From the IMG/VR virus record IMGVR_UViG_3300031344_000002, positions 62,001 to 126,000 of that record: a stretch of DNA of 64,000 nt; one strand, written 5' to 3'. Positions 17,927-52,574 of the stretch are shown here, piece after piece. Numbering within the stretch: position 1 is the first letter of the stretch; the number at the start of each line of letters is the position of its first letter. The position numbers and the translations under genes were made by a program. The notes beneath the pieces are model-generated. The model made no database searches. It saw only the letters and a program-made list of their open reading frames with translations, and had not been told where the DNA came from.

Positions 17927-18882
17927 TAGTGATGATGATAACAGAAATTAAAATATTTTTTAACAATATCAAAAATCTTCGCCATCTATTAAAAGAAGGT
18001 GTTGGTGAGAATGATATTGTCAATGCAATTCAAAAACATGAATATATTTATATTTATTATGCAGGAGATAATACAATTGAAAGAGGATATAGAACAATTC
18101 GACCTTTTGTATTAGGTACAAGCACTGCAGGTAATAAAGTTTTAAGAGCATGGCAAGATAAGGGTAAAAGTGATAGTCTTAGAGTAGATAGTCCAAGAAA
18201 ACGACCTAATCATGAATATCATAGAGATAATGATGGTAAAGAAAAAGCTGGTTGGAGATTATTTCTTGTAGATAAAATAAGTTCGGCATATCCAACAGGA
18301 AAACGTTTTGTTGATGAAGATGGTAATGTAATGATTCCACCTTTATATAATCAAAACGATAAGCAAATGACGAATATTATTGCTTCTGTTTCACCAAAAG
18401 AACCTAAATCAGTGCAAACAAAAGGTTTAGGTAAAGTTGCAGCACCTTCAGTTGTTGCATCAAAAGTAGATAAATCGCAATTTAATACTCAAACAAATAA
18501 ATTTAAAAAATTTTATAATGCTGGTAAGCAAAAAAGAGATGCAACTGCAAAAGATATTCAAAATTTATATGATGTTGCTAAAAGAGTTATGAAAAAATCA
18601 CCAGATAGATATTTAGTTGCTATTGATAAAAAGGGTGATTTTAATCTTGTTGATATTGCTCAAAAAGATAAACTTCCACCAGAAGCAATTGTTGGAAAAT
18701 TAACAAATCTTTACGATAAATTAGTTAGAACAACAAAAACAACAGTACCTGCAGAACAAAGTTTCATTAAACAACAAAAAGATTCTGTTATGAAAAAACA
18801 ATCAAATATAAATAAAACACCAACGATGGTTAAAGAAAATGAAAAAAATCTTATTCAAGGAAAAACTTTTTTCAAACAATAA
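17908..18882 (+). CDS. WYL-domain protein with basic C-terminal extension
   Basis: IYY...RTIRPFVLG...VLRAWQ...GWRLFLVDKIS matches the WYL-like fold pattern. The true start may be a few codons downstream. Confidence 0.65.
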   Translation: MRSNCIIVMMITEIKIFFNNIKNLRHLLKEGVGENDIVNAIQKHEYIYIYYAGDNTIERGYRTIRPFVLGTSTAGNKVLRAWQDKGKSDSLRVDSPRKRPNHEYHRDNDGKEKAGWRLFLVDKISSAYPTGKRFVDEDGNVMIPPLYNQNDKQMTNIIASVSPKEPKSVQTKGLGKVAAPSVVASKVDKSQFNTQTNKFKKFYNAGKQKRDATAKDIQNLYDVAKRVMKKSPDRYLVAIDKKGDFNLVDIAQKDKLPPEAIVGKLTNLYDKLVRTTKTTVPAEQSFIKQQKDSVMKKQSNINKTPTMVKENEKNLIQGKTFFKQ

Positions 18883-18892
18883 AGTATTTATA
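18883..18892 (+). promoter_or_regulatory. Putative late promoter motif AGTATTTATA
   Basis: 22 nt upstream of ATG 18915. Confidence 0.65.
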
Positions 18893-18914
18893 AAAAAATA
18901 TAAAATTTTATAAA

Positions 18915-35619: not shown

Positions 35620-37470
35620 ATGGCAAATAATACAACAACAAACATAATTCAATATAATTCTCGAACATTTAGTGATATTCGTACCGACCTCATTAGTTAT
35701 ATTAGAAGCACATATCCTGAGATTTTTCAAGACTTTTCAGATAGTTCGATTGGAAGCCTACTTATTGATTTAAACGCAGGTGTTGCCAACAACTTGAGTA
35801 TTAACACTGATAGGACATTTCAAGAAACACAGTTGCAATTCGCACAACAAAGGTCATCAATTCTTAATATTGCAAAAAATATGGGATTTAATATTCCTGC
35901 GAGAAAACCAAGTGTTACTGTTATAGATTTTACTACAACGATTCCTGTTTTAGGTAATGCTCCAGACCCCTCATATTATCCTGTTTTAGATGCTGGAGCA
36001 CAAGTAATTGGTGGTGGTAAAATTTTTGAAACTCAAGCAACCATAGATTGGAATTCACCATATAGTAGTTTGGGTGACTCAAATCGTAGAATTATACCGA
36101 ATTTAGACTCAAATGGTATTACTGTAAGTTATTTAGTTACAAAAAGAGAAGTTGTTATAAATGGTGGAACAAACATATATAAAAGAATTATTAATACAGC
36201 AGATGTAATACCATTTTTTAGTATAGTATTACCTGACCCAGATGTAATTGAAATTGAAAATGTAATACTTTTAGAAGGGACAAATTATACCACAAATCCA
36301 GATATTAGTGAATTTTATAATCCAAATAATATGTATTATGAAGTAGATTATTTGGCACAACAACGAGTATTTGTTGTGGATAATACAAGTTCGAGTGCAA
36401 ATACAAATACTAATGGATTAAAATCAGCTACTTGGATTGATGTAACGAGAAAATTTATTAAAGAATATACCCCACAAGGTTATTGTAAATTAACATTTGG
36501 TTCTGGCGATGCAGATGTTAATGCATTTAAAGAAGGTTTTTTAAAAGAAGGTGTTAGCAATGTTTATTTTCTTGAAAATTTCTTAAATAACACTGCTTTG
36601 GGTGAAAAACTTAAATCAAATTATACATTATTCATACGATATAAAACAGGCGGTGGCGTTAGTTCAAATATTGGTGCTAATGTGCTCACACAACTTGGTT
36701 CATATAATCTTAGGCTTGTGGGTTCTCGTCAAGATTATAATCAAACAGTACAAAGGAGTTTAAAAGTAACAAATCCAATTCCAGCAATTGGTGGAAATGA
36801 TGGTTTGAGTATTGAACAAATCAGACAATTAATCAAATATAATTTTTCAAGTCAAGAAAGAAGTGTAACCTTAACTGATTATTTATTACAAATATATAAA
36901 ATGCCGGGTCAATTTGGTTCTCCATTTCGTGCCAATGCATATAAAGAAAATAATAAGGTAGTAATTCCAATACTTGGTATTGGTTCAGATGGTACATTAT
37001 CTAATACAAGCAATTCTTTATTGAAAGAAAATATTGCAAAATATTTATCACAATATCGAATGATTAATGATTATATTGAAATTAGAGATGGTCAAATATT
37101 TAATTTAGCATTTGATATTGATGTATATGTTGAAAATATATCTGATAATCAAGTTGCAAATAGTATTATAACATTAGTTATTGCTTTTCTTAATATTAAT
37201 AATCATGAAATGAATCAGGATATATTTCTTGGTCAACTTCAAACTGAAATTTTAAATGCAAATGGTGTTATAAATGTTATTGGAATAACTGTTTATAATA
37301 AAGTTGGTGGACAATATTCAAATAATGTAATTGCACAATCAATAATTGATACAACAACTGGTGAAATTGAAGTGGTTAATAATACAATACATTCAATGCA
37401 AAATTCAATGTTTGAAATAAAATTTCCTTCAAAAGATATTACTATCTTCCTGCGTAAAAGTATTAGTTAA
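35620..37470 (+). CDS. Baseplate wedge protein, T4 gp6/P2 J-like
   Basis: SRTFSDIR.DLI..., ETQLQFAQQRSSI..IAK..G, GGND..SIEQIRQ and Q.R.VT..DY. Confidence 0.85.
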   Translation: MANNTTTNIIQYNSRTFSDIRTDLISYIRSTYPEIFQDFSDSSIGSLLIDLNAGVANNLSINTDRTFQETQLQFAQQRSSILNIAKNMGFNIPARKPSVTVIDFTTTIPVLGNAPDPSYYPVLDAGAQVIGGGKIFETQATIDWNSPYSSLGDSNRRIIPNLDSNGITVSYLVTKREVVINGGTNIYKRIINTADVIPFFSIVLPDPDVIEIENVILLEGTNYTTNPDISEFYNPNNMYYEVDYLAQQRVFVVDNTSSSANTNTNGLKSATWIDVTRKFIKEYTPQGYCKLTFGSGDADVNAFKEGFLKEGVSNVYFLENFLNNTALGEKLKSNYTLFIRYKTGGGVSSNIGANVLTQLGSYNLRLVGSRQDYNQTVQRSLKVTNPIPAIGGNDGLSIEQIRQLIKYNFSSQERSVTLTDYLLQIYKMPGQFGSPFRANAYKENNKVVIPILGIGSDGTLSNTSNSLLKENIAKYLSQYRMINDYIEIRDGQIFNLAFDIDVYVENISDNQVANSIITLVIAFLNINNHEMNQDIFLGQLQTEILNANGVINVIGITVYNKVGGQYSNNVIAQSIIDTTTGEIEVVNNTIHSMQNSMFEIKFPSKDITIFLRKSIS

Positions 37471-40063: not shown

Positions 40064-43000
40064 GTGGCAAAAATAAAAGTAATAAACACAAATCTCGACC
40101 AAAATTTAAATGGAACTTTTTTTAATGATGCTCCTTCAAAAACAATATTTACGTTTGGGAGTTTTAATGTTACATCTAATTTTGATGGTAAATTAACCAT
40201 AGACTATACCAATACTCTTAGTTCATTTGTTCGTCCTGTTACATTAGAAACAATGGGAATTTCAGATGTTCAGTCTCAAATATTACAAACAAATACAATA
40301 AATGCAGTATTAAATTTAGATAAGTCTGATTTAAATACATTTGTTAGATTTGGTTCTGCTTATGAATTTCTAAGAGTATCAATACAAAATATTATTCTTG
40401 CATATCCGGGAAGTCTTTTTGCGGATTCTCAAAAAGTTCGTGGTGGTAATATAACATTTTCGGGTTATTCATATAATGTAACAGCAAATACTGCAACATT
40501 TTATATACCAACAGCATTTACAACAAATATTTTTGGATTGATTTTTAATTCTGGAAATACAAATGTGTCAAATGATAATCAAATAACAAATTTAAATATT
40601 TCATACAATAATTATGTTGTATGGTTATCAATTGCTCCTGAATCCTTTTACCCAATAGTTGGGTTTACTGGAAATACTGTAGATAGTATTTATACTCTTT
40701 CAAAATATTATTTAAAAGTACAGGTCACTGGTGACCCATTTTCTTTATATACTGATGGTACTAGTCATACAGGTAATATTGATTTTCACGTAAAACCAAA
40801 TAATATAATTTTTGAAGAATATCGAGCATTACTTAGTGATTATGAAAAATATATTGTATCTGAAAGAAGTGGTACAAATGGATTTCAATTTGCATTAAAA
40901 GACCCAACATTACTTGATAATGGGTCTATTATATATTCGGATGCAATAATGCTTTGGACAACATCTGATAAATATAATATTGATATAAACACCTCCAATT
41001 ATCAAAAATTTTTAGAAATTGTATTAACAATTGGTGCAAAATATGATGCAATTAAAACTGATTTAATTGCAAGATTTTTAACACCTGCTTCATTAAAAAC
41101 ATATGACCAAACAGAAAATGGTAAAGTAACCAAACTATTAAGAATCTATGGTAGAGAATTTGACCAATTAAGGCAATTTATTGATTCTTTGGTTTATATT
41201 AATAAAGTTACTTATGATAAATTAAATAATATTCCAGACCAATTAGTAAGTAATATGGCAAGGACATTTGGATGGAATTATTTTTCATTGGTTAATGAAA
41301 GTGAATTAGTTCAAAGTATTTTAACTATTAATGATATAGAAAGAAATTTAAATGAAGATTTATTACCAGCAGAAATTGATATAGAATTGTGGAGAAGAAT
41401 ATTAAATAATACAAATTATTTTTGGAAATCAAAAGGAACTCGTGAAGCAATAAAATCAATATTTTTATTAATTGGTATACCTGAACCATTTATTAATATT
41501 ACAGAATATGTCTATACTGTCGATGGTAAAATTAATCCAAATAGCGTTCAAATAGCTCAACAAGATTTTCCTTCAAATTCATTACCTTATGATACAAATG
41601 GTTATCCAGTTGCACCATTAGAAACAAATGATTTTTATTTTCAAGTTTCAGGTGATACAGATGGTGGTCAGGCTTATCTTAATGTATTTCGAACAGCAGG
41701 ATTTAATCTTTCGGCAACGGTTGATAATAGAAAATCATGGATACAAACAGGTGCAACAACAAGAATTGATAATACAACGCCACAATATTATCAAGAAGAT
41801 AGTAAACTTGTGATTAATACAAAAGAAGTAGATATTGCGCTTGATACAGCACGTGGTATTGAATATGATGTTTATGATTATATTAAAAATGTAGATTTTC
41901 CGGCAAATAATAGTGGATATACATTACCATATTCATATGTTAACATATCGTTAGATTATACGGGAACTCAAAATACATTTCAACTTCCAACACCATATGA
42001 TAAAACTCAAGGTGATTTAGAAGTTCGTTTTAATGGTATTTTATTAAATGCGCCAAAAACTGGTAGTACTAGTAATATTGTAACTCGTGCGGATTATAGT
42101 GTTTCTGGAAATAGTTTTACTATTTTAAATGGTAATTATGCAACTAATTCAAATAATCGTAGAGATGTTATTGAGGCAACATTTATTTACAGTGGTGGAA
42201 CACGACCTGTTACTGGAATTACAATTCAATATATTGTAACACGTATTAGACCACAATTTCCATATACATATATTCCATTACCAAGTCTTCCACGTGGTGA
42301 TGTTCAAGTAACAATAAATGGTATTGCACTAACAAAAGGTACATCACAATTTACTGCAGATTATATCGTTGACCCAAACAATACAACAGGTCATAGTCAA
42401 ATTATTTTACAAAATACAGATGTAATATCATTTTTGGCAATTAATCCAGAAGTACAAGTAGCATATGTCGAAGTTTATGGTAGTAATGATATTAATGCAA
42501 GAAGTGAAGTTGTAAGAATTGATAGTTTTAATAATAGTAAAATATATTTTAATTCTAGTGCAAATAAATATGTTTATAAATTAAATTATAAGGCAAATAA
42601 AGCATCAGATATTAAATTTTTGGTTGATGGTATTGCATTAGAGCCATATAGAGATTATGATATTAATATAATGAATCCATATGAAATATTTTTACCAAAT
42701 GGTCTTAAATATGGAAATGTTCTTAGTGTTTATTATCTTGTTGGTGGAAACGCTGTATTTACACCAGTTGTTTCAGATAGTTTTGGAATTGGTGATATAA
42801 GTAAATTATCATTTTTGGAATTTATTGTATTAATTCAAAAAAAGATGATTAATGCAAGAAATAGAAAAACAATATCGGATTTTAATGGTGGCTGGTATCC
42901 TACATTATTAAGAATTTATGAAATGTATATGCAAAGAAGTACATTATCAACTGGCAATACTTTACATTCAAATGGATATACATTTGAAAATTTATATCCA

Positions 43001-43738
43001 TTTTTAAATAAATATAATGCATTTTTTCAAAGATTTGTAGACCAATTATTATCAGCCACAATTATATTAAAAAATGGTGGTTTATTAATTCGTAATACTG
43101 TATTCACAAAACAAAAATTTACATATAAGAGAGGTGTAAATGTCTCTCCATCTGGAACTACATATCATTATAGTCCAGAACCACCACATAATTATGGGGA
43201 AATTCCACCTATTGGTATTGGTAATTTAACAAGTAGAGGAACATTACAATATTTGGGTGATGATGGTGCAATGTTTGTTATAAAACAAACTCCAGAACCA
43301 TCAGCAAGTGATTTATATATAGAAACTAATGCAGGTACTGCTGGAATTGGTTCTATGGTAAATATTGGTGGTAAAAATATTAATGGATTAGATATTATAA
43401 CTGAATATGGTGTGTCGTATAAAAAATCAACAGTTCCAACATGGTCAAAATGTAATATATTAGGTACACCTTCAGATACATCATTTAGTATTACATTAAA
43501 TAATTTAGCTGAAGGTACTATATATAATTATAATGCGTATGTTCATTCACATAGTCTTGGAAATACTGGTAATACATTATCATTAAAAACATTAACGACA
43601 CCAGCACCAGTACCACCATCAGGTAGAACAAGACAAAATACATCAAGTTCTTCAACAGTAATTTGTGGTACTGGTGGATATGCTATTCAATGTTATCCTA
43701 ATATTCAATGGTATGGAATGCAATATAGACCGAAATAA
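40064..43738 (+). CDS. Large baseplate/tail protein (P2 gpI/T4 gp7-like wedge domain) with C-terminal FN3 domains
   Basis: WRRILNN..YFWKSKGTREAI..IF..IGIP (tail protein I-like). FN3 signature ITEYGVSY..W..L..GT.YNYNAY. Ends in the first half of another FN3. Confidence 0.7.
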   Translation: MAKIKVINTNLDQNLNGTFFNDAPSKTIFTFGSFNVTSNFDGKLTIDYTNTLSSFVRPVTLETMGISDVQSQILQTNTINAVLNLDKSDLNTFVRFGSAYEFLRVSIQNIILAYPGSLFADSQKVRGGNITFSGYSYNVTANTATFYIPTAFTTNIFGLIFNSGNTNVSNDNQITNLNISYNNYVVWLSIAPESFYPIVGFTGNTVDSIYTLSKYYLKVQVTGDPFSLYTDGTSHTGNIDFHVKPNNIIFEEYRALLSDYEKYIVSERSGTNGFQFALKDPTLLDNGSIIYSDAIMLWTTSDKYNIDINTSNYQKFLEIVLTIGAKYDAIKTDLIARFLTPASLKTYDQTENGKVTKLLRIYGREFDQLRQFIDSLVYINKVTYDKLNNIPDQLVSNMARTFGWNYFSLVNESELVQSILTINDIERNLNEDLLPAEIDIELWRRILNNTNYFWKSKGTREAIKSIFLLIGIPEPFINITEYVYTVDGKINPNSVQIAQQDFPSNSLPYDTNGYPVAPLETNDFYFQVSGDTDGGQAYLNVFRTAGFNLSATVDNRKSWIQTGATTRIDNTTPQYYQEDSKLVINTKEVDIALDTARGIEYDVYDYIKNVDFPANNSGYTLPYSYVNISLDYTGTQNTFQLPTPYDKTQGDLEVRFNGILLNAPKTGSTSNIVTRADYSVSGNSFTILNGNYATNSNNRRDVIEATFIYSGGTRPVTGITIQYIVTRIRPQFPYTYIPLPSLPRGDVQVTINGIALTKGTSQFTADYIVDPNNTTGHSQIILQNTDVISFLAINPEVQVAYVEVYGSNDINARSEVVRIDSFNNSKIYFNSSANKYVYKLNYKANKASDIKFLVDGIALEPYRDYDINIMNPYEIFLPNGLKYGNVLSVYYLVGGNAVFTPVVSDSFGIGDISKLSFLEFIVLIQKKMINARNRKTISDFNGGWYPTLLRIYEMYMQRSTLSTGNTLHSNGYTFENLYPFLNKYNAFFQRFVDQLLSATIILKNGGLLIRNTVFTKQKFTYKRGVNVSPSGTTYHYSPEPPHNYGEIPPIGIGNLTSRGTLQYLGDDGAMFVIKQTPEPSASDLYIETNAGTAGIGSMVNIGGKNINGLDIITEYGVSYKKSTVPTWSKCNILGTPSDTSFSITLNNLAEGTIYNYNAYVHSHSLGNTGNTLSLKTLTTPAPVPPSGRTRQNTSSSSTVICGTGGYAIQCYPNIQWYGMQYRPK

Positions 43739-43750
43739 ATTATGAAAATA

Positions 43751-43760
43751 AGTATTTATA
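43751..43760 (+). promoter_or_regulatory. Putative late promoter motif AGTATTTATA inside the 36-nt in-frame spacer
   Basis: 14 nt upstream of ATG 43775. Confidence 0.6.
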
Positions 43761-43774
43761 AAAAATAATATAAA

Positions 43775-44731
43775 ATGCCAACACCTACTTGGACAACAAC
43801 GACATTGACGGCAGGACCTCTTGCAAGTAATTCATATACAATGGCAATTCCAAATTTGTCTGCTAATACTAAATATGAATATAGGGCATATTTTATTGTT
43901 AATGGTATTGCATATTATGGAAATACACTTACTGGTAGTACATTACCAGTACCACCTGTTTCACCAACAGTATGTACTGGTGTTGTTGGCACAGTATTGT
44001 CAACAAAATTTCCAATAAACAATAATAAAGTATGTACCATAGGTAGTTCACCAATTAATGAATACGGAATATTATATACACAACTTAGTTCTTGGGGAAC
44101 GAATTGTAATTTAATTTATTCTAATTCCAGTTGTTCCGCACTTGTAAAAATAAATTCAACATGTTCTACAATTGGAGCAGGAAGTTGTTTTTGTAATTGT
44201 GCTTGTCATCTTTCTCCAAATACTATGACATATTATCGAGCATTTGTAAAAAATAGCGCAGGTCTTGGATATGGTGTTATTAAATGTCAACAAACAGCAC
44301 CGCCATCACAAATTAATTTATGTATGTTTGCTTCAAATGGTGGTGATGGTACAACAATTAGTTCTAAATGTGCTTGTTTTTATTCAACACCAGTAATGAC
44401 AGCAGGTGAATGTTATTGTGTTACATTAAATATTGATTTACATAATAGTTATACTTCTGCTGGTTCATATTCGTCAATTTCTGTCGTTAGATATCCAATT
44501 GGTACTTGTTTAAGTTGTTGTATATCAGGAGGACAAGATTGTTATACTGGTTCATTAAGTTTTCCATTTTGTGCTGGTGATTTATATTGTATAACAGCAA
44601 CTGCAGCAATTCCAACAACAGCATGTGCGAATATAAACACATCATCGATTTTTATTGGCGGAATTACTAATATAGTTGGTGGATATGCAAAAGGTACAAC
44701 ATGTACATGTATTTGTGCTGTAACTGGTTAA
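43775..44731 (+). CDS. FN3-containing, Cys-rich tail-associated protein (begins mid-FN3)
   Basis: PTW...L..NTKYEYRAY, then INEYGILY...L.PNT..YYRAF, then a Cys-rich C-terminal domain. Confidence 0.6.
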   Translation: MPTPTWTTTTLTAGPLASNSYTMAIPNLSANTKYEYRAYFIVNGIAYYGNTLTGSTLPVPPVSPTVCTGVVGTVLSTKFPINNNKVCTIGSSPINEYGILYTQLSSWGTNCNLIYSNSSCSALVKINSTCSTIGAGSCFCNCACHLSPNTMTYYRAFVKNSAGLGYGVIKCQQTAPPSQINLCMFASNGGDGTTISSKCACFYSTPVMTAGECYCVTLNIDLHNSYTSAGSYSSISVVRYPIGTCLSCCISGGQDCYTGSLSFPFCAGDLYCITATAAIPTTACANINTSSIFIGGITNIVGGYAKGTTCTCICAVTG

Positions 44732-44757
44732 TAAAAGAAATTAAAATAATTTATTAT

Positions 44758-44767
44758 AGTATTTATA
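44758..44767 (+). promoter_or_regulatory. Putative late promoter motif AGTATTTATA
   Basis: 19 nt upstream of ATG 44787. Confidence 0.65.
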
Positions 44768-44786
44768 AAATATATATTAAAATTAA

Positions 44787-46115
44787 ATGGCATTTATTGA
44801 AAAAAAAGACCCTGTTGTTATAAACATAAAATTAACATCAAAAGGTAGAGAATTATTATCTCAAGGTAATTTAAATTTTAAATATTATACAATTGGCGAT
44901 AGTGAAATAGATTATGCATATACAGATGCAGTTAATACTATTTCCACCAACTATACTGAATTTAATACGAATATATTAAAACCAGTAGATAAGAATCCAA
45001 ATCCATTAAGTTTTATTCCAAGAAATTTAAGCGGTGACCCATATAATGTAATATCAACCATACCTGTTACATCATATAGTGTTGAAAATCATATTGATTC
45101 TATAGGATTTTTTACAAATAGTGGCAATACTTTTATTGTTGATAGTAATCATGTGAAACAACCAGATGCAATGATTCAAGTAAATACTATTACTGGTGGT
45201 ACAAAACTTACATTATTAAAAGCACCAACATATGGTACAAGCGGAAATGAACCTCAATCTGGTGATTCATTATTTATAAGGTGGACACATAGTAATAGTA
45301 CCACAGGAAATAGTTATAATGTTAATAAAAATTATCCAACTCCTAATTTATGGTATAAAATTACCAATAAATTTTCAGGTTCTTTAGCAAGCGGTAATGT
45401 TTCAATTGGTGTTGATAGGGAATTACCAAATTTTAGTACATTAGGACTTTCTTCAACAGTTAAAGCAAGTGCAATGATTTATTATAATACTATTAATTAT
45501 AGTGGTAATACTATGGCAAATATGTCACCAACAGAATATCTTGATGAAAGTGTTTTATCTTTTTTACAGAATAGTCAATGTCCAACAATAATATTTCCTT
45601 TTTGGAATATGTCAATTATATTTACAGAAGAAATTGCGGGAGTACAAGCAGCAAACTTAAAATATACCCAATTTAAAAATAAAGCGTTTGGTAGTTTTGT
45701 ATCATATATTCAAAATCAATCACCCATTTATAAAAAATTGGGCGTTATTCATTATACAAATTCATCACCAGCAAATGTTTATGGGGAAGGATTTTTATTA
45801 AAATCAACTATATTAGAAATTCCCACAATAATGTGGCATAAATCAACAGGAACTAAAATGGGACTTACATTAATACCATATTCAATTGATGGTAGTCCAA
45901 TGTATCTGACAGGTTCATCAAATGTTAATTATGGATTAGGAACTCCATATTATTATCTTATTGATGTTAATGATACAACATTAACACCATATTCTGTTGG
46001 TAAAGTGTTTCCTGAATTAAAAATATTCGTTATAGAAGACCAAGAATTATTATTTGCAATGTCATATAAATCAAATAGGTCTTGGACTCTTCCTAATTAT
46101 ACAATTAATACTTAA
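44787..46115 (+). CDS. Tail/baseplate fibre-attachment-like protein
   Basis: KLTSKGRELL..G...F.Y..IGDSE N-terminus resembles tail-collar/fibre N-termini. Confidence 0.5.
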   Translation: MAFIEKKDPVVINIKLTSKGRELLSQGNLNFKYYTIGDSEIDYAYTDAVNTISTNYTEFNTNILKPVDKNPNPLSFIPRNLSGDPYNVISTIPVTSYSVENHIDSIGFFTNSGNTFIVDSNHVKQPDAMIQVNTITGGTKLTLLKAPTYGTSGNEPQSGDSLFIRWTHSNSTTGNSYNVNKNYPTPNLWYKITNKFSGSLASGNVSIGVDRELPNFSTLGLSSTVKASAMIYYNTINYSGNTMANMSPTEYLDESVLSFLQNSQCPTIIFPFWNMSIIFTEEIAGVQAANLKYTQFKNKAFGSFVSYIQNQSPIYKKLGVIHYTNSSPANVYGEGFLLKSTILEIPTIMWHKSTGTKMGLTLIPYSIDGSPMYLTGSSNVNYGLGTPYYYLIDVNDTTLTPYSVGKVFPELKIFVIEDQELLFAMSYKSNRSWTLPNYTINT

Positions 46116-52024: not shown

Positions 52025-52544
52025 TAAATATAAAAAACTTATTATGAATTTCTTAAAAGCTAAATATTCACAAAGTGATATTGATGATGTATCAGAAATA
52101 ATGATTAAAATTTTTATAAATTTAAAATTGTTCGATAATACAAAATCAAAATTTAGCTCATGGGTATTTAGCATTGCTAAAAATTATATGATAGATAAAT
52201 GGCGTAGCAATGCCACATTTAGTGCTGAAAATATTAATTATATAACAACAAATGATTGTATATCTACATCAAATAATAGTAATTATATTACATCAACAAA
52301 TATAAATAATCTCGAATTTATTACAAATTATAACATGGAATTTGAGAATAATAACTCAATAAATTATATTTCAAAACAATTATCACCTGAAGAATTTACT
52401 TTACTTGATATGAAATATGTTCAGGGATATGATTATTGTGAAATTGGAAAAGAATTTAATGTTTCAAGTTCTACAATTAGCAATAGAGTCAATTATATTA
52501 AAACTAAACTCAAAAAAAACAATCCAGAGATAATTTATGATTAA
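51933..52544 (+). CDS. Phage RNA polymerase sigma factor (ECF/sigma70-like); start uncertain (51933 or 51966)
   Basis: LYNKYKKLI, FSSWVFSIAKNYMIDKWR (region 2) and region 4 HTH GYDYCEIGKEFNVSSSTISNRV. Confidence 0.8.
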   Translation: MIIAVEQEKEDMILIQNTLNGNPQAQEKLYNKYKKLIMNFLKAKYSQSDIDDVSEIMIKIFINLKLFDNTKSKFSSWVFSIAKNYMIDKWRSNATFSAENINYITTNDCISTSNNSNYITSTNINNLEFITNYNMEFENNNSINYISKQLSPEEFTLLDMKYVQGYDYCEIGKEFNVSSSTISNRVNYIKTKLKKNNPEIIYD

Positions 52545-52548
52545 ATCA

Positions 52549-52558
52549 AGTATTTATA
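52549..52558 (+). promoter_or_regulatory. Putative late promoter motif AGTATTTATA
   Basis: 16 nt upstream of ATG 52575. Confidence 0.65.
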
Positions 52559-52574
52559 AAAAATATTTGATATC

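What the first reader, a model, noticed from the sequence alone, without database searches (positions are those of the whole stretch)
43620..43960. FN3 domain split in frame across two ORFs by a 36-nt spacer carrying a late promoter: gene fission, strand complementation or ribosomal bypass
The intact FN3 upstream reads ITEYGVSYKKS-TVPTWSK...LNNLAEGTIYNYNAY. The next FN3 reads IQWYGMQYRPK-stop, then MPTPTWTT...IPNLSANTKYEYRAY in the next ORF, so the break falls mid-domain. The spacer 43739-43774 is exactly 12 codons, so both ORFs share one frame. It contains AGTATTTATA, and the codon before the stop (AAA) matches the codon just before the downstream ATG (AAA), echoing the matched take-off and landing codons of T4 gene 60 bypassing. 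AAA is common here, so that match is weak evidence. Fission with separate late expression of the Cys-rich distal part is the simpler reading.
Basis: partly seen in the sequence, partly recalled or inferred. Interest (0 to 1): 0.6.

Follow-up and report, generated by a model that had tools for sequence, protein, structure and literature searches.

The report
Split FN3 joint between fibre genes
Two adjacent tail-fibre genes of an uncultured jumbo phage each encode half of one fibronectin-type-III domain. This split is old and conserved among relatives, and it most likely acts as a plug-and-socket joint holding the two proteins together, not as a ribosomal bypass site.

Summary
Gene A (40064-43738, 1224 aa) stops 3 codons after the motif WYGMQY. 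Gene B (43775-44731, 318 aa) starts in the same frame 36 nt later with the rest of an FN3 domain. Independent assemblies and contigs from other samples bridge the junction without a difference.

The split is not peculiar to this phage. In 20 distinct related loci, gene A has the first half only and a separate gene B begins with the second half. Their spacers are unrelated, 25-45 nt long and in all three frames. In 7 loci the two genes are naturally fused, the FN3 is complete, and there is no separate B.

A natural fusion folds as an FN3 tandem (pLDDT 90), and the break falls in the loop after strand C. The two halves of this window co-fold with FN3 strand pairing (ipSAE 0.74, best control 0.00).

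Bypass and readthrough are refuted: there is a second in-frame TAA, no stem-loop, and relatives have no matched codons.

The event specific to this window is loss of a roughly 775-nt alternative tip module from the 3' end of gene A. The nearest relatives (85% identical) still carry it.

GTATTTATA is a genuine recurrent promoter-like motif.

Best reading: a non-covalent fibre joint formed by FN3 fragment complementation. This is inferred, not shown.

The parts
35620..37470 (+). Baseplate wedge subunit gene. It gives the context that places A and B in the baseplate/fibre module.
   Evidence: PHROG phrog_219 'baseplate wedge subunit', E 4e-24
40064..43738 (+). Gene A, 1224 aa: a large conserved fibre or baseplate-peripheral protein that ends with FN3-1 plus the first half of FN3-2
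   Evidence: 648 relatives were found, most of them 1440-1600 aa.
43313..43603 (+). Intact FN3 repeat 1 of A (about residues 1084-1180)
   Evidence: Alignments A2 and A4. AF2 model of the homologous region has pLDDT above 90, and Foldseek matches FN3 tandems.
43616..43735 (+). First half of FN3-2 (strands A, B, C; A residues 1185-1224), ending in the invariant motif YGMQY: the 'socket'
   Evidence: Invariant G121, Y134, G135, Q137, Y138 in 48 relatives. In the complex model, the residues of A that touch B are 102-109 and 112-141 of the submitted chain, i.e. A 1185-1192 and 1195-1224.
43736..43738 (+). TAA stop of A, 3 codons after YGMQY. It lies in what would be the C-C' loop of the FN3.
   Evidence: The loop position comes from the model of the natural fusion.
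43739..43774 (+). 36-nt AT-rich spacer. It resembles other intergenic regions of the same genome.
   Evidence: 87% match to window 52527-52565 and 93% match to 18882-18906. No RNA structure, z = 0.02.
43752..43760 (+). GTATTTATA promoter-like motif, 14 nt upstream of B's ATG
   Evidence: 18 copies, all on the + strand, against 3.4 expected.
43766..43768 (+). Second in-frame TAA inside the spacer
43732..43756 (+). Junction left by absence of the roughly 775-800-nt alternative tip module that the nearest relative L010 carries
   Evidence: blastn of the window against L010: homology ends at 43731 (L010 7755) and resumes at 43757 (L010 8556)
43775..44731 (+). Gene B, 318 aa: the distal tip protein
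   Evidence: Orthologous separate ORFs are present in 19 other distinct loci.
43775..43954 (+). Second half of FN3-2 (strands C', E, F, G; B residues 1-60): the 'plug'
   Evidence: Alignment A3: W6, G14, Y21, Y34, Y36, R37, Y47, G49 are invariant or nearly so. B residues 3-60 touch A in the complex model.
43964..44299 (+). Intact FN3 repeat 3 within B (about residues 64-175)
   Evidence: The homologous stretch of the L005 protein scores above the Pfam cut-offs for fn3 and Pur_ac_phosph_N
44300..44728 (+). Variable Cys-rich C-terminal tip of B, the presumed receptor-binding part
   Evidence: DNA similarity to L010 stops at 44296 and resumes at the next gene. Relatives carry other tips, for example Fib_succ_major in L007.

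Best explanation
Genes A and B encode two subunits of one baseplate-attached fibre. The subunits are joined non-covalently by reconstituting a single FN3 domain.

Protein A ends with strands A-B-C of the domain (the socket, ...WYGMQY). Protein B begins with strands C'-E-F-G (the plug, ...TW...GPL..N.Y...YEYRAY...YYGN). B then carries one intact FN3 and a variable Cys-rich tip that presumably binds the host.

The 36-nt spacer is an ordinary intergenic region. It holds the genome's recurrent promoter-like motif, and B is translated from its own ATG. The shared frame is a coincidence.

In the phage family this joint exists in three states:
- (A) fused in one chain;
- (B) split, with protein A also carrying its own roughly 250-aa alternative tip module after the socket, which suggests a branched two-tip fibre;
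- (C) split, with A ending at the socket.

This window is state C, derived from state B by loss of the alternative module.

Shown: the anatomy, the conservation, the natural fusions, the FN3 fold of the fused form, and the strict one-to-one occurrence of the halves. Inferred: that the halves bind in the virion, that B is the receptor-binding tip, and that state B fibres are branched.
For: 1. Rosetta-stone fusions. Many orthologues (for example P0103, P0017, P0037, P0066) run from WYGMQY straight into ..W..G.L..N.Y...Y.YRAY.. in one chain. In those loci the next gene (MAFIEKKDP...) follows after 32-49 nt, with no separate B (7 distinct loci).

2. Conserved split. In 20 distinct loci where A lacks the second half, a separate ORF starting with exactly that half follows after 25-45 nt. 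One first half pairs with one second half in 27 of 27 loci.

3. Fold of the fused form. AF2 of the natural fusion P0103:1077-1285 gives pLDDT 90.2 and two beta-sandwiches. The break site maps to the loop after strand C. Foldseek matches FN3 tandems such as titin 3lpw and contactins at E about 1e-7, probability 1.00.

4. Co-fold of the window's own halves. A 1084-1224 with B 1-66 scores ipSAE 0.74 (runs 0.77, 0.69, 0.74) against a best control of 0.00. This mark was reached by 58 of 80 solved complexes and 2 of 110 mismatched pairs. The runs share at least 99% of their contacts, and the partner's pLDDT is at least 84. The contacts are WYGMQY (strand C) with YEYRAYFI (strand F), B with E, and C with C', which is the FN3 topology.

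5. State B is not completed in cis. In the AF2 model of P0005:1113-1509 the socket stretch has pLDDT 68-81, strand C is not formed, and residues 141-144 fall below 50. The alternative module that follows scores 90 or more.

6. Both halves stay conserved in split forms. The residue before YGMQY in A co-varies with the residue after YRAY in B. All 8 rows with F in B have W in A, and none of the 56 rows with Y or F at the A position has F in B. These two residues touch in the complex model (A chain residue 133 with B residue 40).

5 and 6 together argue that the socket is kept for a partner supplied in trans.

7. Physical feasibility. High-affinity fragment complementation of an engineered FN3 has been reported (Dutta et al. 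2005, Protein Sci 14:2838). I saw this only as reference 50 of PMC11666773 and did not read the paper.

8. Context. A baseplate wedge gene lies 2.6 kb upstream. B tips are hypervariable.
Against: There is no experimental evidence that the proteins bind or are in the virion.

The co-fold may pass simply because the model recognises an FN3. Any artificially cut FN3 might be reassembled in silico, so the score shows complementarity of the pieces, not affinity. My own alignments were used, so the calibration counts hold only roughly.

The covariation is not corrected for shared ancestry.

The branched-fibre idea for state B rests on one AF2 model with lowered confidence in the socket. No complex was modelled for it.

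Neither A nor B matches any PHROG family or any cultured-phage record, so 'fibre' is inferred from gene order and architecture.
Confidence: 0.68

Rival explanations
1. The half-domains are relics. A and B function and attach independently, with B binding the baseplate or another protein. The two FN3 halves are vestigial, disordered ends left by an old gene break or module insertion.
For: No PHROG family and no cultured-phage match was found for either protein, and Pfam gives only a weak, sub-threshold CBM_X2 hit for A. In state B the socket is followed by a full tip module, so A could work on its own. The co-fold could be fold recognition only (caveats).
Against: Both halves are conserved as strongly in split forms as in fused forms: YGMQY is invariant in 48 sequences, and W6, Y34, Y36, R37, Y47, G49 are conserved in 19 B proteins. 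The variable tips, by contrast, are unalignable. In three independent class B/class C pairs (the window vs L010, L007 vs L048, L006 vs L019) the alternative module is missing from a few codons after the socket, and the socket is kept. First and second halves occur strictly one-to-one in 27 loci.
Confidence: 0.2
2. Recoding. Ribosomes bypass the 39-nt gap (AAA take-off, AAA landing, as in T4 gene 60) or read through the stops, making a fused protein of about 1540 aa.
For: The spacer is 12 codons long. AAA precedes the stop and AAA precedes the ATG. A stop follows the take-off codon directly.
Against: There is a second in-frame TAA at 43766-43768. The junction has no RNA structure (z = 0.02).

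Relatives have spacers of 25, 26, 27, 28, 29, 30, 32, 33, 35, 36, 41, 44 and 45 nt, and 11 of 19 are out of frame. Their flanking codons do not match: AGG/AAT, TTT/AAT, CCT/AAT, GAA/AAT.

A peat strain has 3 nt inserted at 43731-43732. By my reading of the inserted letters this gives CCA TGA, moving the stop one codon earlier.

In state B phages, 243-262 residues and a stop separate the halves. TAA ends nearly all ORFs of the window, so it is not a sense codon.
Confidence: 0.02
3. Artefact or fresh pseudogene. A sequencing or assembly error, or a recent disabling insertion, broke one gene.
For: The split lies mid-domain and in frame, and most orthologues are about 1500 aa.
Against: The junction is identical in a second IMG/VR contig and in contigs of two other runs. 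The same architecture is seen in 19 other distinct loci down to about 40% identity. B has its own ATG and a promoter-like motif.
Confidence: 0.01

Closest known systems
Branched (anchor-branch) receptor-binding protein systems of Klebsiella podophages, e.g. KP32, K11, KP34 (Latka et al. 2019, PMC6872550; Latka et al. 2026, PMC13352976)
   Same: A first fibre or spike protein carries a docking site. A second, separately encoded RBP attaches through a short conserved N-terminal element. The distal parts are exchangeable modules. State B of this family may likewise carry two tips.
   Different: In those phages the docking site is a complete T4gp10-like branching domain that binds a conserved peptide. 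Here the docking element is half of an FN3 domain on each partner. No T4gp10-like domain was detected. The phages here are uncultured jumbo phages of about 350 kb with a contractile-tail-type baseplate gene.
Donor-strand complementation and exchange in chaperone-usher pili, and strand exchange in Bacteroidia type V pili (general knowledge)
   Same: An incomplete Ig-like beta-sandwich in one subunit is completed by strands supplied by the N-terminus of the next subunit, giving a very stable non-covalent joint.
   Different: Pili donate a single strand (G) into a groove. Here about four strands (C', E, F, G) come from the partner, so each protein holds roughly half the domain. No chaperone or protease step is evident.
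Engineered fragment complementation of the tenth FN3 of fibronectin (Dutta, Batori, Koide and Koide 2005, Protein Sci 14:2838; seen only as a reference in PMC11666773; paper not held)
   Same: An FN3 cut into two fragments reassembles with high affinity (from the title). This shows the chemistry is feasible.
   Different: That system is man-made and monomeric. I could not check where it was cut. The present case is natural, conserved, and used as an inter-subunit joint (inferred).
T4 gene 60 translational bypassing (general knowledge)
   Same: A stop follows directly after a codon that recurs just before the resumption site, and a short non-coding gap lies inside what looks like one coding unit.
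   Different: There is no stem-loop, there is a second stop, the downstream part has its own ATG and a promoter-like motif, and the gap is not conserved in length, frame or codons among relatives.

Membership tests
Fibronectin type III domain (PF00041-like fold) | Seven-strand beta-sandwich with sheets A-B-E and C'-C-F-G | tested here: met
   The AF2 model of the natural fusion has pLDDT 90.2, with strands at 99-102, 112-119, 130-137, 143-144, 157-162, 170-179 and 182-192. Foldseek top hits are FN3 tandems at E about 1e-7. The split halves pair C with F, B with E and C with C'.
Fibronectin type III domain (PF00041-like fold) | Match to the Pfam fn3 profile above its gathering score | tested here: inconclusive
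   P0001 and P0002 have no fn3 hit at E up to 0.1. Several orthologues carry precomputed PF00041 or PF16656. The intact FN3 of the L005 B protein passes (30.3 bits against a cut-off of 25). B residues 15-36 of L009 and L028 match only profile positions 56-78 of 93, consistent with B starting mid-domain.
T4 gene 60-type translational bypass | Matched take-off and landing codons, with a stop directly after take-off | tested here: inconclusive
   Met in the window (AAA TAA ... AAA ATG). Not met in the four split relatives examined for this.
T4 gene 60-type translational bypass | Stable stem-loop at the take-off site | tested here: not met
   The MFE of 43710-43800 is -6.3 kcal/mol against a shuffle mean of -6.34, z = 0.02
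T4 gene 60-type translational bypass | Gap free of obstacles, and a single fused product | tested here: not met
   A second in-frame TAA is present. Spacers in relatives are 25-45 nt in all three frames. State B relatives have about 750-800 nt of coding sequence plus a stop between the halves. The fused product itself is not testable with these tools.
Stop-codon reassignment or readthrough | The stop codon in question is used as sense elsewhere in the genome | tested here: not met
   TAA terminates nearly all of the 51 ORFs listed for the window. Orthologues of A in split relatives also end at TAA or TGA.
Anchor-branch RBP systems (T4gp10-like branching domain plus conserved peptide) | T4gp10-like branching domain in the first RBP | tested here: not met
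   No such Pfam or PHROG match in P0001. This is a resemblance in function only.
Anchor-branch RBP systems (T4gp10-like branching domain plus conserved peptide) | Conserved N-terminal docking element on a separately encoded second RBP with a variable distal part | tested here: met
   The first ~60-66 residues of B are conserved in 19 lineages (52% mean column identity), while the C-termini differ
Promoter of the phage (GTATTTATA motif) | Over-represented, strand-specific, and positioned just upstream of gene starts | tested here: met
   18 copies against 3.4 expected, all on the + strand, 14 of them 11-42 nt upstream of an ATG or GTG. The motif is also present in the A-B spacers of 8 other split loci. 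Promoter activity and timing ('late') were not tested.

The most novel reading that the evidence does not exclude
A natural, conserved two-gene FN3 plug-and-socket. Half of the beta-sandwich sits at the C-terminus of the fibre shaft protein, and the other half sits at the N-terminus of an exchangeable tip protein. In relatives whose shaft protein keeps its own tip after the socket, this gives branched fibres with two different receptor-binding tips. Phages would then switch between one-chain, branched and single-tip fibres by fusing the genes or deleting one cassette. This would be a new structural principle for attaching RBPs and a ready-made module for engineering.
Probability: 0.4. Interest if true: 0.75.

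Novelty: new variant of a known kind. Interest (0 to 1): 0.55.

Why it matters
Attachment of exchangeable receptor-binding proteins to phage tails determines host range and is the basis of RBP engineering. Known joints use complete domains that bind peptides, or trimeric N-terminal anchors.

A joint made by splitting a single FN3 between two polypeptides would be a different solution. It occurs here side by side with natural fused and module-bearing versions. It is analogous to donor-strand complementation in pili, but with half a domain supplied by each partner.

The family offers natural controls for direct testing: fused, split, and split plus extra tip. It also shows how cassette gain or loss at one loop of a domain remodels a fibre.

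For annotation, the case shows that a mid-domain, in-frame gene break in a phage structural gene need not be a pseudogene, an assembly error or a recoding site.

Tried and rejected
- Cultured relatives: megablast of 42500-45000 and tblastn of protein A against 50,697 phage records found nothing.
- Family scans: Pfam and PHROGs on A and B gave only a weak CBM_X2 hit (E 0.0013, below cut-off) and no PHROG. PHROGs on ten neighbouring genes named three: a glycosyltransferase-like protein, a baseplate wedge subunit and an exonuclease.
- Close-relative scan: the search for related loci with B alone returned only a near-identical contig.
- Class B model: Foldseek gave only generic strings of Ig/FN3 domains with low TM-scores and did not identify the tip.
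- Bypass: tested and rejected.
- Readthrough or another genetic code: rejected because of the second stop and because TAA is the normal terminator.
- Misassembly: rejected.
- Literature: full-text searches for a split FN3 or strand complementation in tail fibres or RBPs found no paper. That library lacks most subscription journals, so this is weak evidence of novelty. The Dutta et al. 2005 paper is not held.
- RNA evidence: the one RNA-library run (X24) has contigs on parts of A's 3' end and on B, but none across the junction, and DNA carry-over cannot be excluded. It says nothing about the promoter.
- Not used: the large representative-protein search and the remaining word searches, because relatives were already plentiful.
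Full report
**1. What is in the window**

The window is bases 62001-126000 of a 218-kb linear IMG/VR virus record. CheckV estimates it 66% complete, and GC is about 26%.

ORF A runs 40064-43738 (GTG start, 1224 aa, P0001) and ends ...NIQWYGMQYRPK with TAA at 43736-43738. ORF B runs 43775-44731 (318 aa, P0002) and begins MPTPTWTTTTLTAGPLASNSY...KYEYRAYFIVNG.

The spacer 43739-43774 is 36 nt, so the two ORFs share a frame. It contains AGTATTTATA (43751-43760).

**2. It is not an artefact**

- A 14.7-kb contig from another IMG/VR data set (L004) is 99.95% identical over 10,705 bp and has the same split.
- Logan contigs of two further rhizosphere runs bridge the junction with no difference: X2 covers 43535-44625 and X3 covers 43109-43843.
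- A peat-metagenome variant (X7) has 3 nt inserted at 43731-43732. By my reading of the inserted letters this gives CCA TGA, so the stop would lie one codon earlier. The gene is still split there.
- A 95%-identical protein cluster (P0004) ends at the same residue.

**3. The promoter-like motif is real**

GTATTTATA occurs 18 times in the window, always on the + strand, against 3.4 expected and at most 8 in 100 shuffles. Fourteen copies lie 11-42 nt upstream of an ORF start, including those of A's upstream neighbour, of B and of the gene after B.

The spacer resembles other intergenic regions of the same genome. Whether the motif marks 'late' genes is untested. In sense orientation it is not the T4 late consensus; only its reverse complement, TATAAATAC, resembles it.

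**4. Relatives: three states of one joint**

Protein A has 648 relatives in the word search, and most are 1440-1600 aa. After the invariant motif (W/Y)YGMQY they fall into three classes.

- **Class A, fused.** The chain continues with ..W..G.L..N.Y...Y.YRAY...YYG, the second half of the FN3. P0103 reads ...YYGMQYKTTASPSWTTTTLTAG..., very like the window's B.
- **Class B.** The chain continues with a different module of about 250 aa (..IGS..FNVTP..CNVTV.G..W...), ending in a Cys-rich tip homologous to B's tip.
- **Class C.** The protein stops 3-8 residues after the motif. This class includes the window, P0004, P0008, P0014, P0016, P0028, P0099 and L064.

I fetched 87 loci and examined the gene order.

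- In 7 distinct class A loci, the conserved next gene (MAFIEKKDP...) follows after 32-49 nt and there is no separate B.
- In all 20 distinct class B and class C loci with downstream sequence, a separate ORF follows that begins with the second half of the FN3.
- For the 19 of these loci whose spacers I listed, the spacers are 25-45 nt and unrelated in sequence: 8 in frame, 3 at +1 and 8 at +2. Nine hold GTATTTAT, counting the window.

So first and second halves occur one-to-one in 27 of 27 loci, either in cis or in trans.

**5. What happened in this lineage**

The closest relative with a long contig is L010 (349 kb; its protein A is 85% identical). Its gene A is class B (1509 aa). It still has a separate 317-aa orthologue of B, which begins MPTPTPTWTTTTLTAG..., after a 44-nt spacer holding GAGTATTTATA.

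At the DNA level, homology between the window and L010 runs to 43731 and resumes at 43757. L010 has about 800 nt in between.

Two other class C/class B pairs show the same clean absence: L007 lacks 750 nt relative to L048, and L006 lacks 736 nt relative to L019.

On a tree of the conserved body of A, the 7 class C rows need at least 6 changes. The resolved ones are nested beside class B sisters, and the window's clade is sister to P0005/P0006 with support of 95-100. The residues kept after WYGMQY differ among class C proteins and resemble those of their class B sisters.

The event in this window is therefore loss of A's own tip module, not a fission of an intact FN3. The split itself is old. 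Which state is ancestral overall cannot be decided without a root.

**6. Fold**

The natural fusion P0103:1077-1285, modelled with 16 class A homologues, gives mean pLDDT 90.2 and two beta-sandwiches. In the second one, strands A, B and C (99-102, 112-119, 130-137) precede the site equivalent to the window's stop. Strands C', E, F and G (143-144, 157-162, 170-179, 182-192) follow it, so the break lies in the C-C' loop.

Foldseek against the PDB returns FN3 tandems, including titin A77-A78 and contactin FN1-FN3, at E about 1e-7 and probability 1.00.

Pfam does not detect fn3 in P0001 or P0002. It does detect it in several orthologues and in the intact FN3 of the L005 B protein. The N-termini of two B proteins match only the distal part of a related profile, positions 56-78 of 93.

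**7. Do the halves fit?**

I co-folded A 1084-1224 with B 1-66, each with its own alignment.

- The score was ipSAE 0.74 (three runs: 0.77, 0.69, 0.74) against a best control of 0.00.
- That mark was reached by 58 of 80 solved complexes and by 2 of 110 mismatched pairs. These counts hold only roughly, because my own alignments were used.
- The runs agree in at least 99% of contacts, and the partner's pLDDT is at least 84.
- The interface is A 1185-1224 with B 3-60.
- The most confident contacts are WYGMQY with YEYRAYFI (C with F), strand B with strand E, and C with C'. This is the FN3 topology.

Caveat: a model that knows the FN3 fold may reassemble any cut FN3. The result shows that the pieces are complementary, not that they bind in the virion.

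**8. Class B leaves the socket open**

In the AF2 model of P0005:1113-1509 (32 homologues, mean pLDDT 88), FN3-1 and the alternative module score 90 or more. The socket stretch scores 68-81, strand C is not formed, and residues 141-144 fall below 50.

This agrees with a socket that waits for B in trans. Class B fibres would then be branched, with two tips.

**9. Covariation**

The residue before YGMQY in A (W or Y) and the residue after YRAY in B (F, M or other) are associated. All 8 rows with F have W, and none of the 56 rows with Y or F at the A position has F. This holds in cis and in trans.

These two positions touch in the complex model (A chain residue 133 with B residue 40). The association is suggestive only, because it is not corrected for ancestry.

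**10. Recoding is rejected**

- There is a second in-frame stop.
- The RNA around the junction has no structure (z = 0.02).
- Spacers in relatives are out of frame and unrelated.
- Flanking codons in relatives do not match: AGG/AAT, TTT/AAT, CCT/AAT, GAA/AAT.
- In class B, a whole module and a stop lie between the halves.
- TAA is the usual terminator in this genome.

**11. Context and function**

A baseplate wedge gene (phrog_219) lies at 35620-37470. A is a very large conserved protein that ends in FN3 repeats.

The first 175 or so residues of B are conserved, and its C-terminus is hypervariable. DNA similarity to L010 is lost at 44296, and L007 carries a Fib_succ_major domain there instead.

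This is the pattern of a fibre shaft plus an exchangeable receptor-binding tip. That assignment is inferred. Neither protein matches any PHROG or any cultured phage.

The runs holding near-identical sequence are rhizosphere and peat metagenomes. Pond, freshwater and viral metagenomes hold only small shares of the sampled words, and I did not examine them. The host is unknown.

**12. Comparison with what is known**

In function, the closest described systems are the branched anchor-branch RBPs of Klebsiella podophages. There, a conserved N-terminal peptide of RBP2 docks on a T4gp10-like branching domain of RBP1 (PMC6872550; PMC13352976). No such domain is present here, so this is a resemblance and not membership.

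In structure, the closest analogy is donor-strand complementation in pili, but with about four donated strands instead of one.

Engineered FN3 fragment complementation has been reported (Dutta et al. 2005). I know it only from a reference list, because the paper is not held.

Full-text searches found no description of a split FN3 joint in phage fibres. This is weak evidence, given the library's limits.

**13. Verdict**

- The bypass idea is refuted.
- 'Fission' is the wrong description of the local event.
- The promoter motif is real.
- The complementation reading is the best supported (confidence about 0.68).

This is a new variant of a known kind, namely non-covalent RBP docking. It is moderately interesting and directly testable.

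Noticed in passing
window 43742-43768: The A-B spacer holds a mini-ORF in the A/B frame, ATG AAA ATA AGT ATT TAT AAA AAA TAA (MKISIYKK). It is probably chance in AT-rich DNA. The 11-mer ATTATGAAAAT recurs in the 36-nt spacer of L006, but on the other side of the GTATTTATA motif.
   Followed up: partly
window 42055-42087 and 43199-43230; L010 6007-6105: Gene A of the nearest relative L010 has an extra stretch of about 66 nt that is missing in the window. That stretch repeats a ..PPIG.GNLT.. motif, which occurs once near the window's A residue 1045. So A shows an internal duplication or indel polymorphism upstream of the FN3 repeats.
   Followed up: no
window, whole (18 sites, e.g. 6197, 16131, 18884, 34440, 44759, 52550, 60162, 61918): GTATTTATA is a strictly + strand, gene-proximal motif with the extended consensus A-GTATTTATA-A(T/A)AAA. 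Its reverse complement, TATAAATAC, looks like the T4 late promoter, but the orientation relative to the genes is the opposite.
   Followed up: partly
window 43731-43732 (run X7, peat metagenome): A related strain (about 96% identical over 43541-44800) has 3 nt inserted here. By my reading this gives CCA TGA, so its protein A would end ...YRP with a TGA stop one codon earlier. This is microheterogeneity exactly at the deletion scar.
   Followed up: partly
window 42957-43578 and 44109-44577 (run X24): Contigs of a peat metatranscriptome library match parts of A's 3' end and of B at 83-99% identity. None bridges the junction. This hints that relatives are transcribed in situ, but DNA carry-over cannot be excluded.
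   Followed up: no
L007 479-1098 and 10227-10511; L051 580-940, 8049-8750, 10443-10900: Related loci contain a diverged repetitive coding sequence (about 70% identity between copies). It recurs in several genes around the fibre module, including the 419-aa ORF upstream and part of the B tip region of L051. I did not characterise it.
   Followed up: no
window 44787-46115 and homologues in all loci: The gene after B (MAFIEKKDPVV..., 442 aa here, 411-1080 aa in relatives) has a very conserved N-terminal part of about 150 residues and a variable C-terminus. This is the same pattern as a second fibre or RBP. No Pfam or PHROG match was found.
   Followed up: partly
P0019 (1211 aa) and P0058 (1390 aa), relatives of A: Some orthologues lack one or both FN3 repeats. 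P0019 joins a Cys-rich tip directly to the body. P0058 follows WYGMQY with a poly-Thr linker and then a tip. Further architectures therefore exist at this junction.
   Followed up: no
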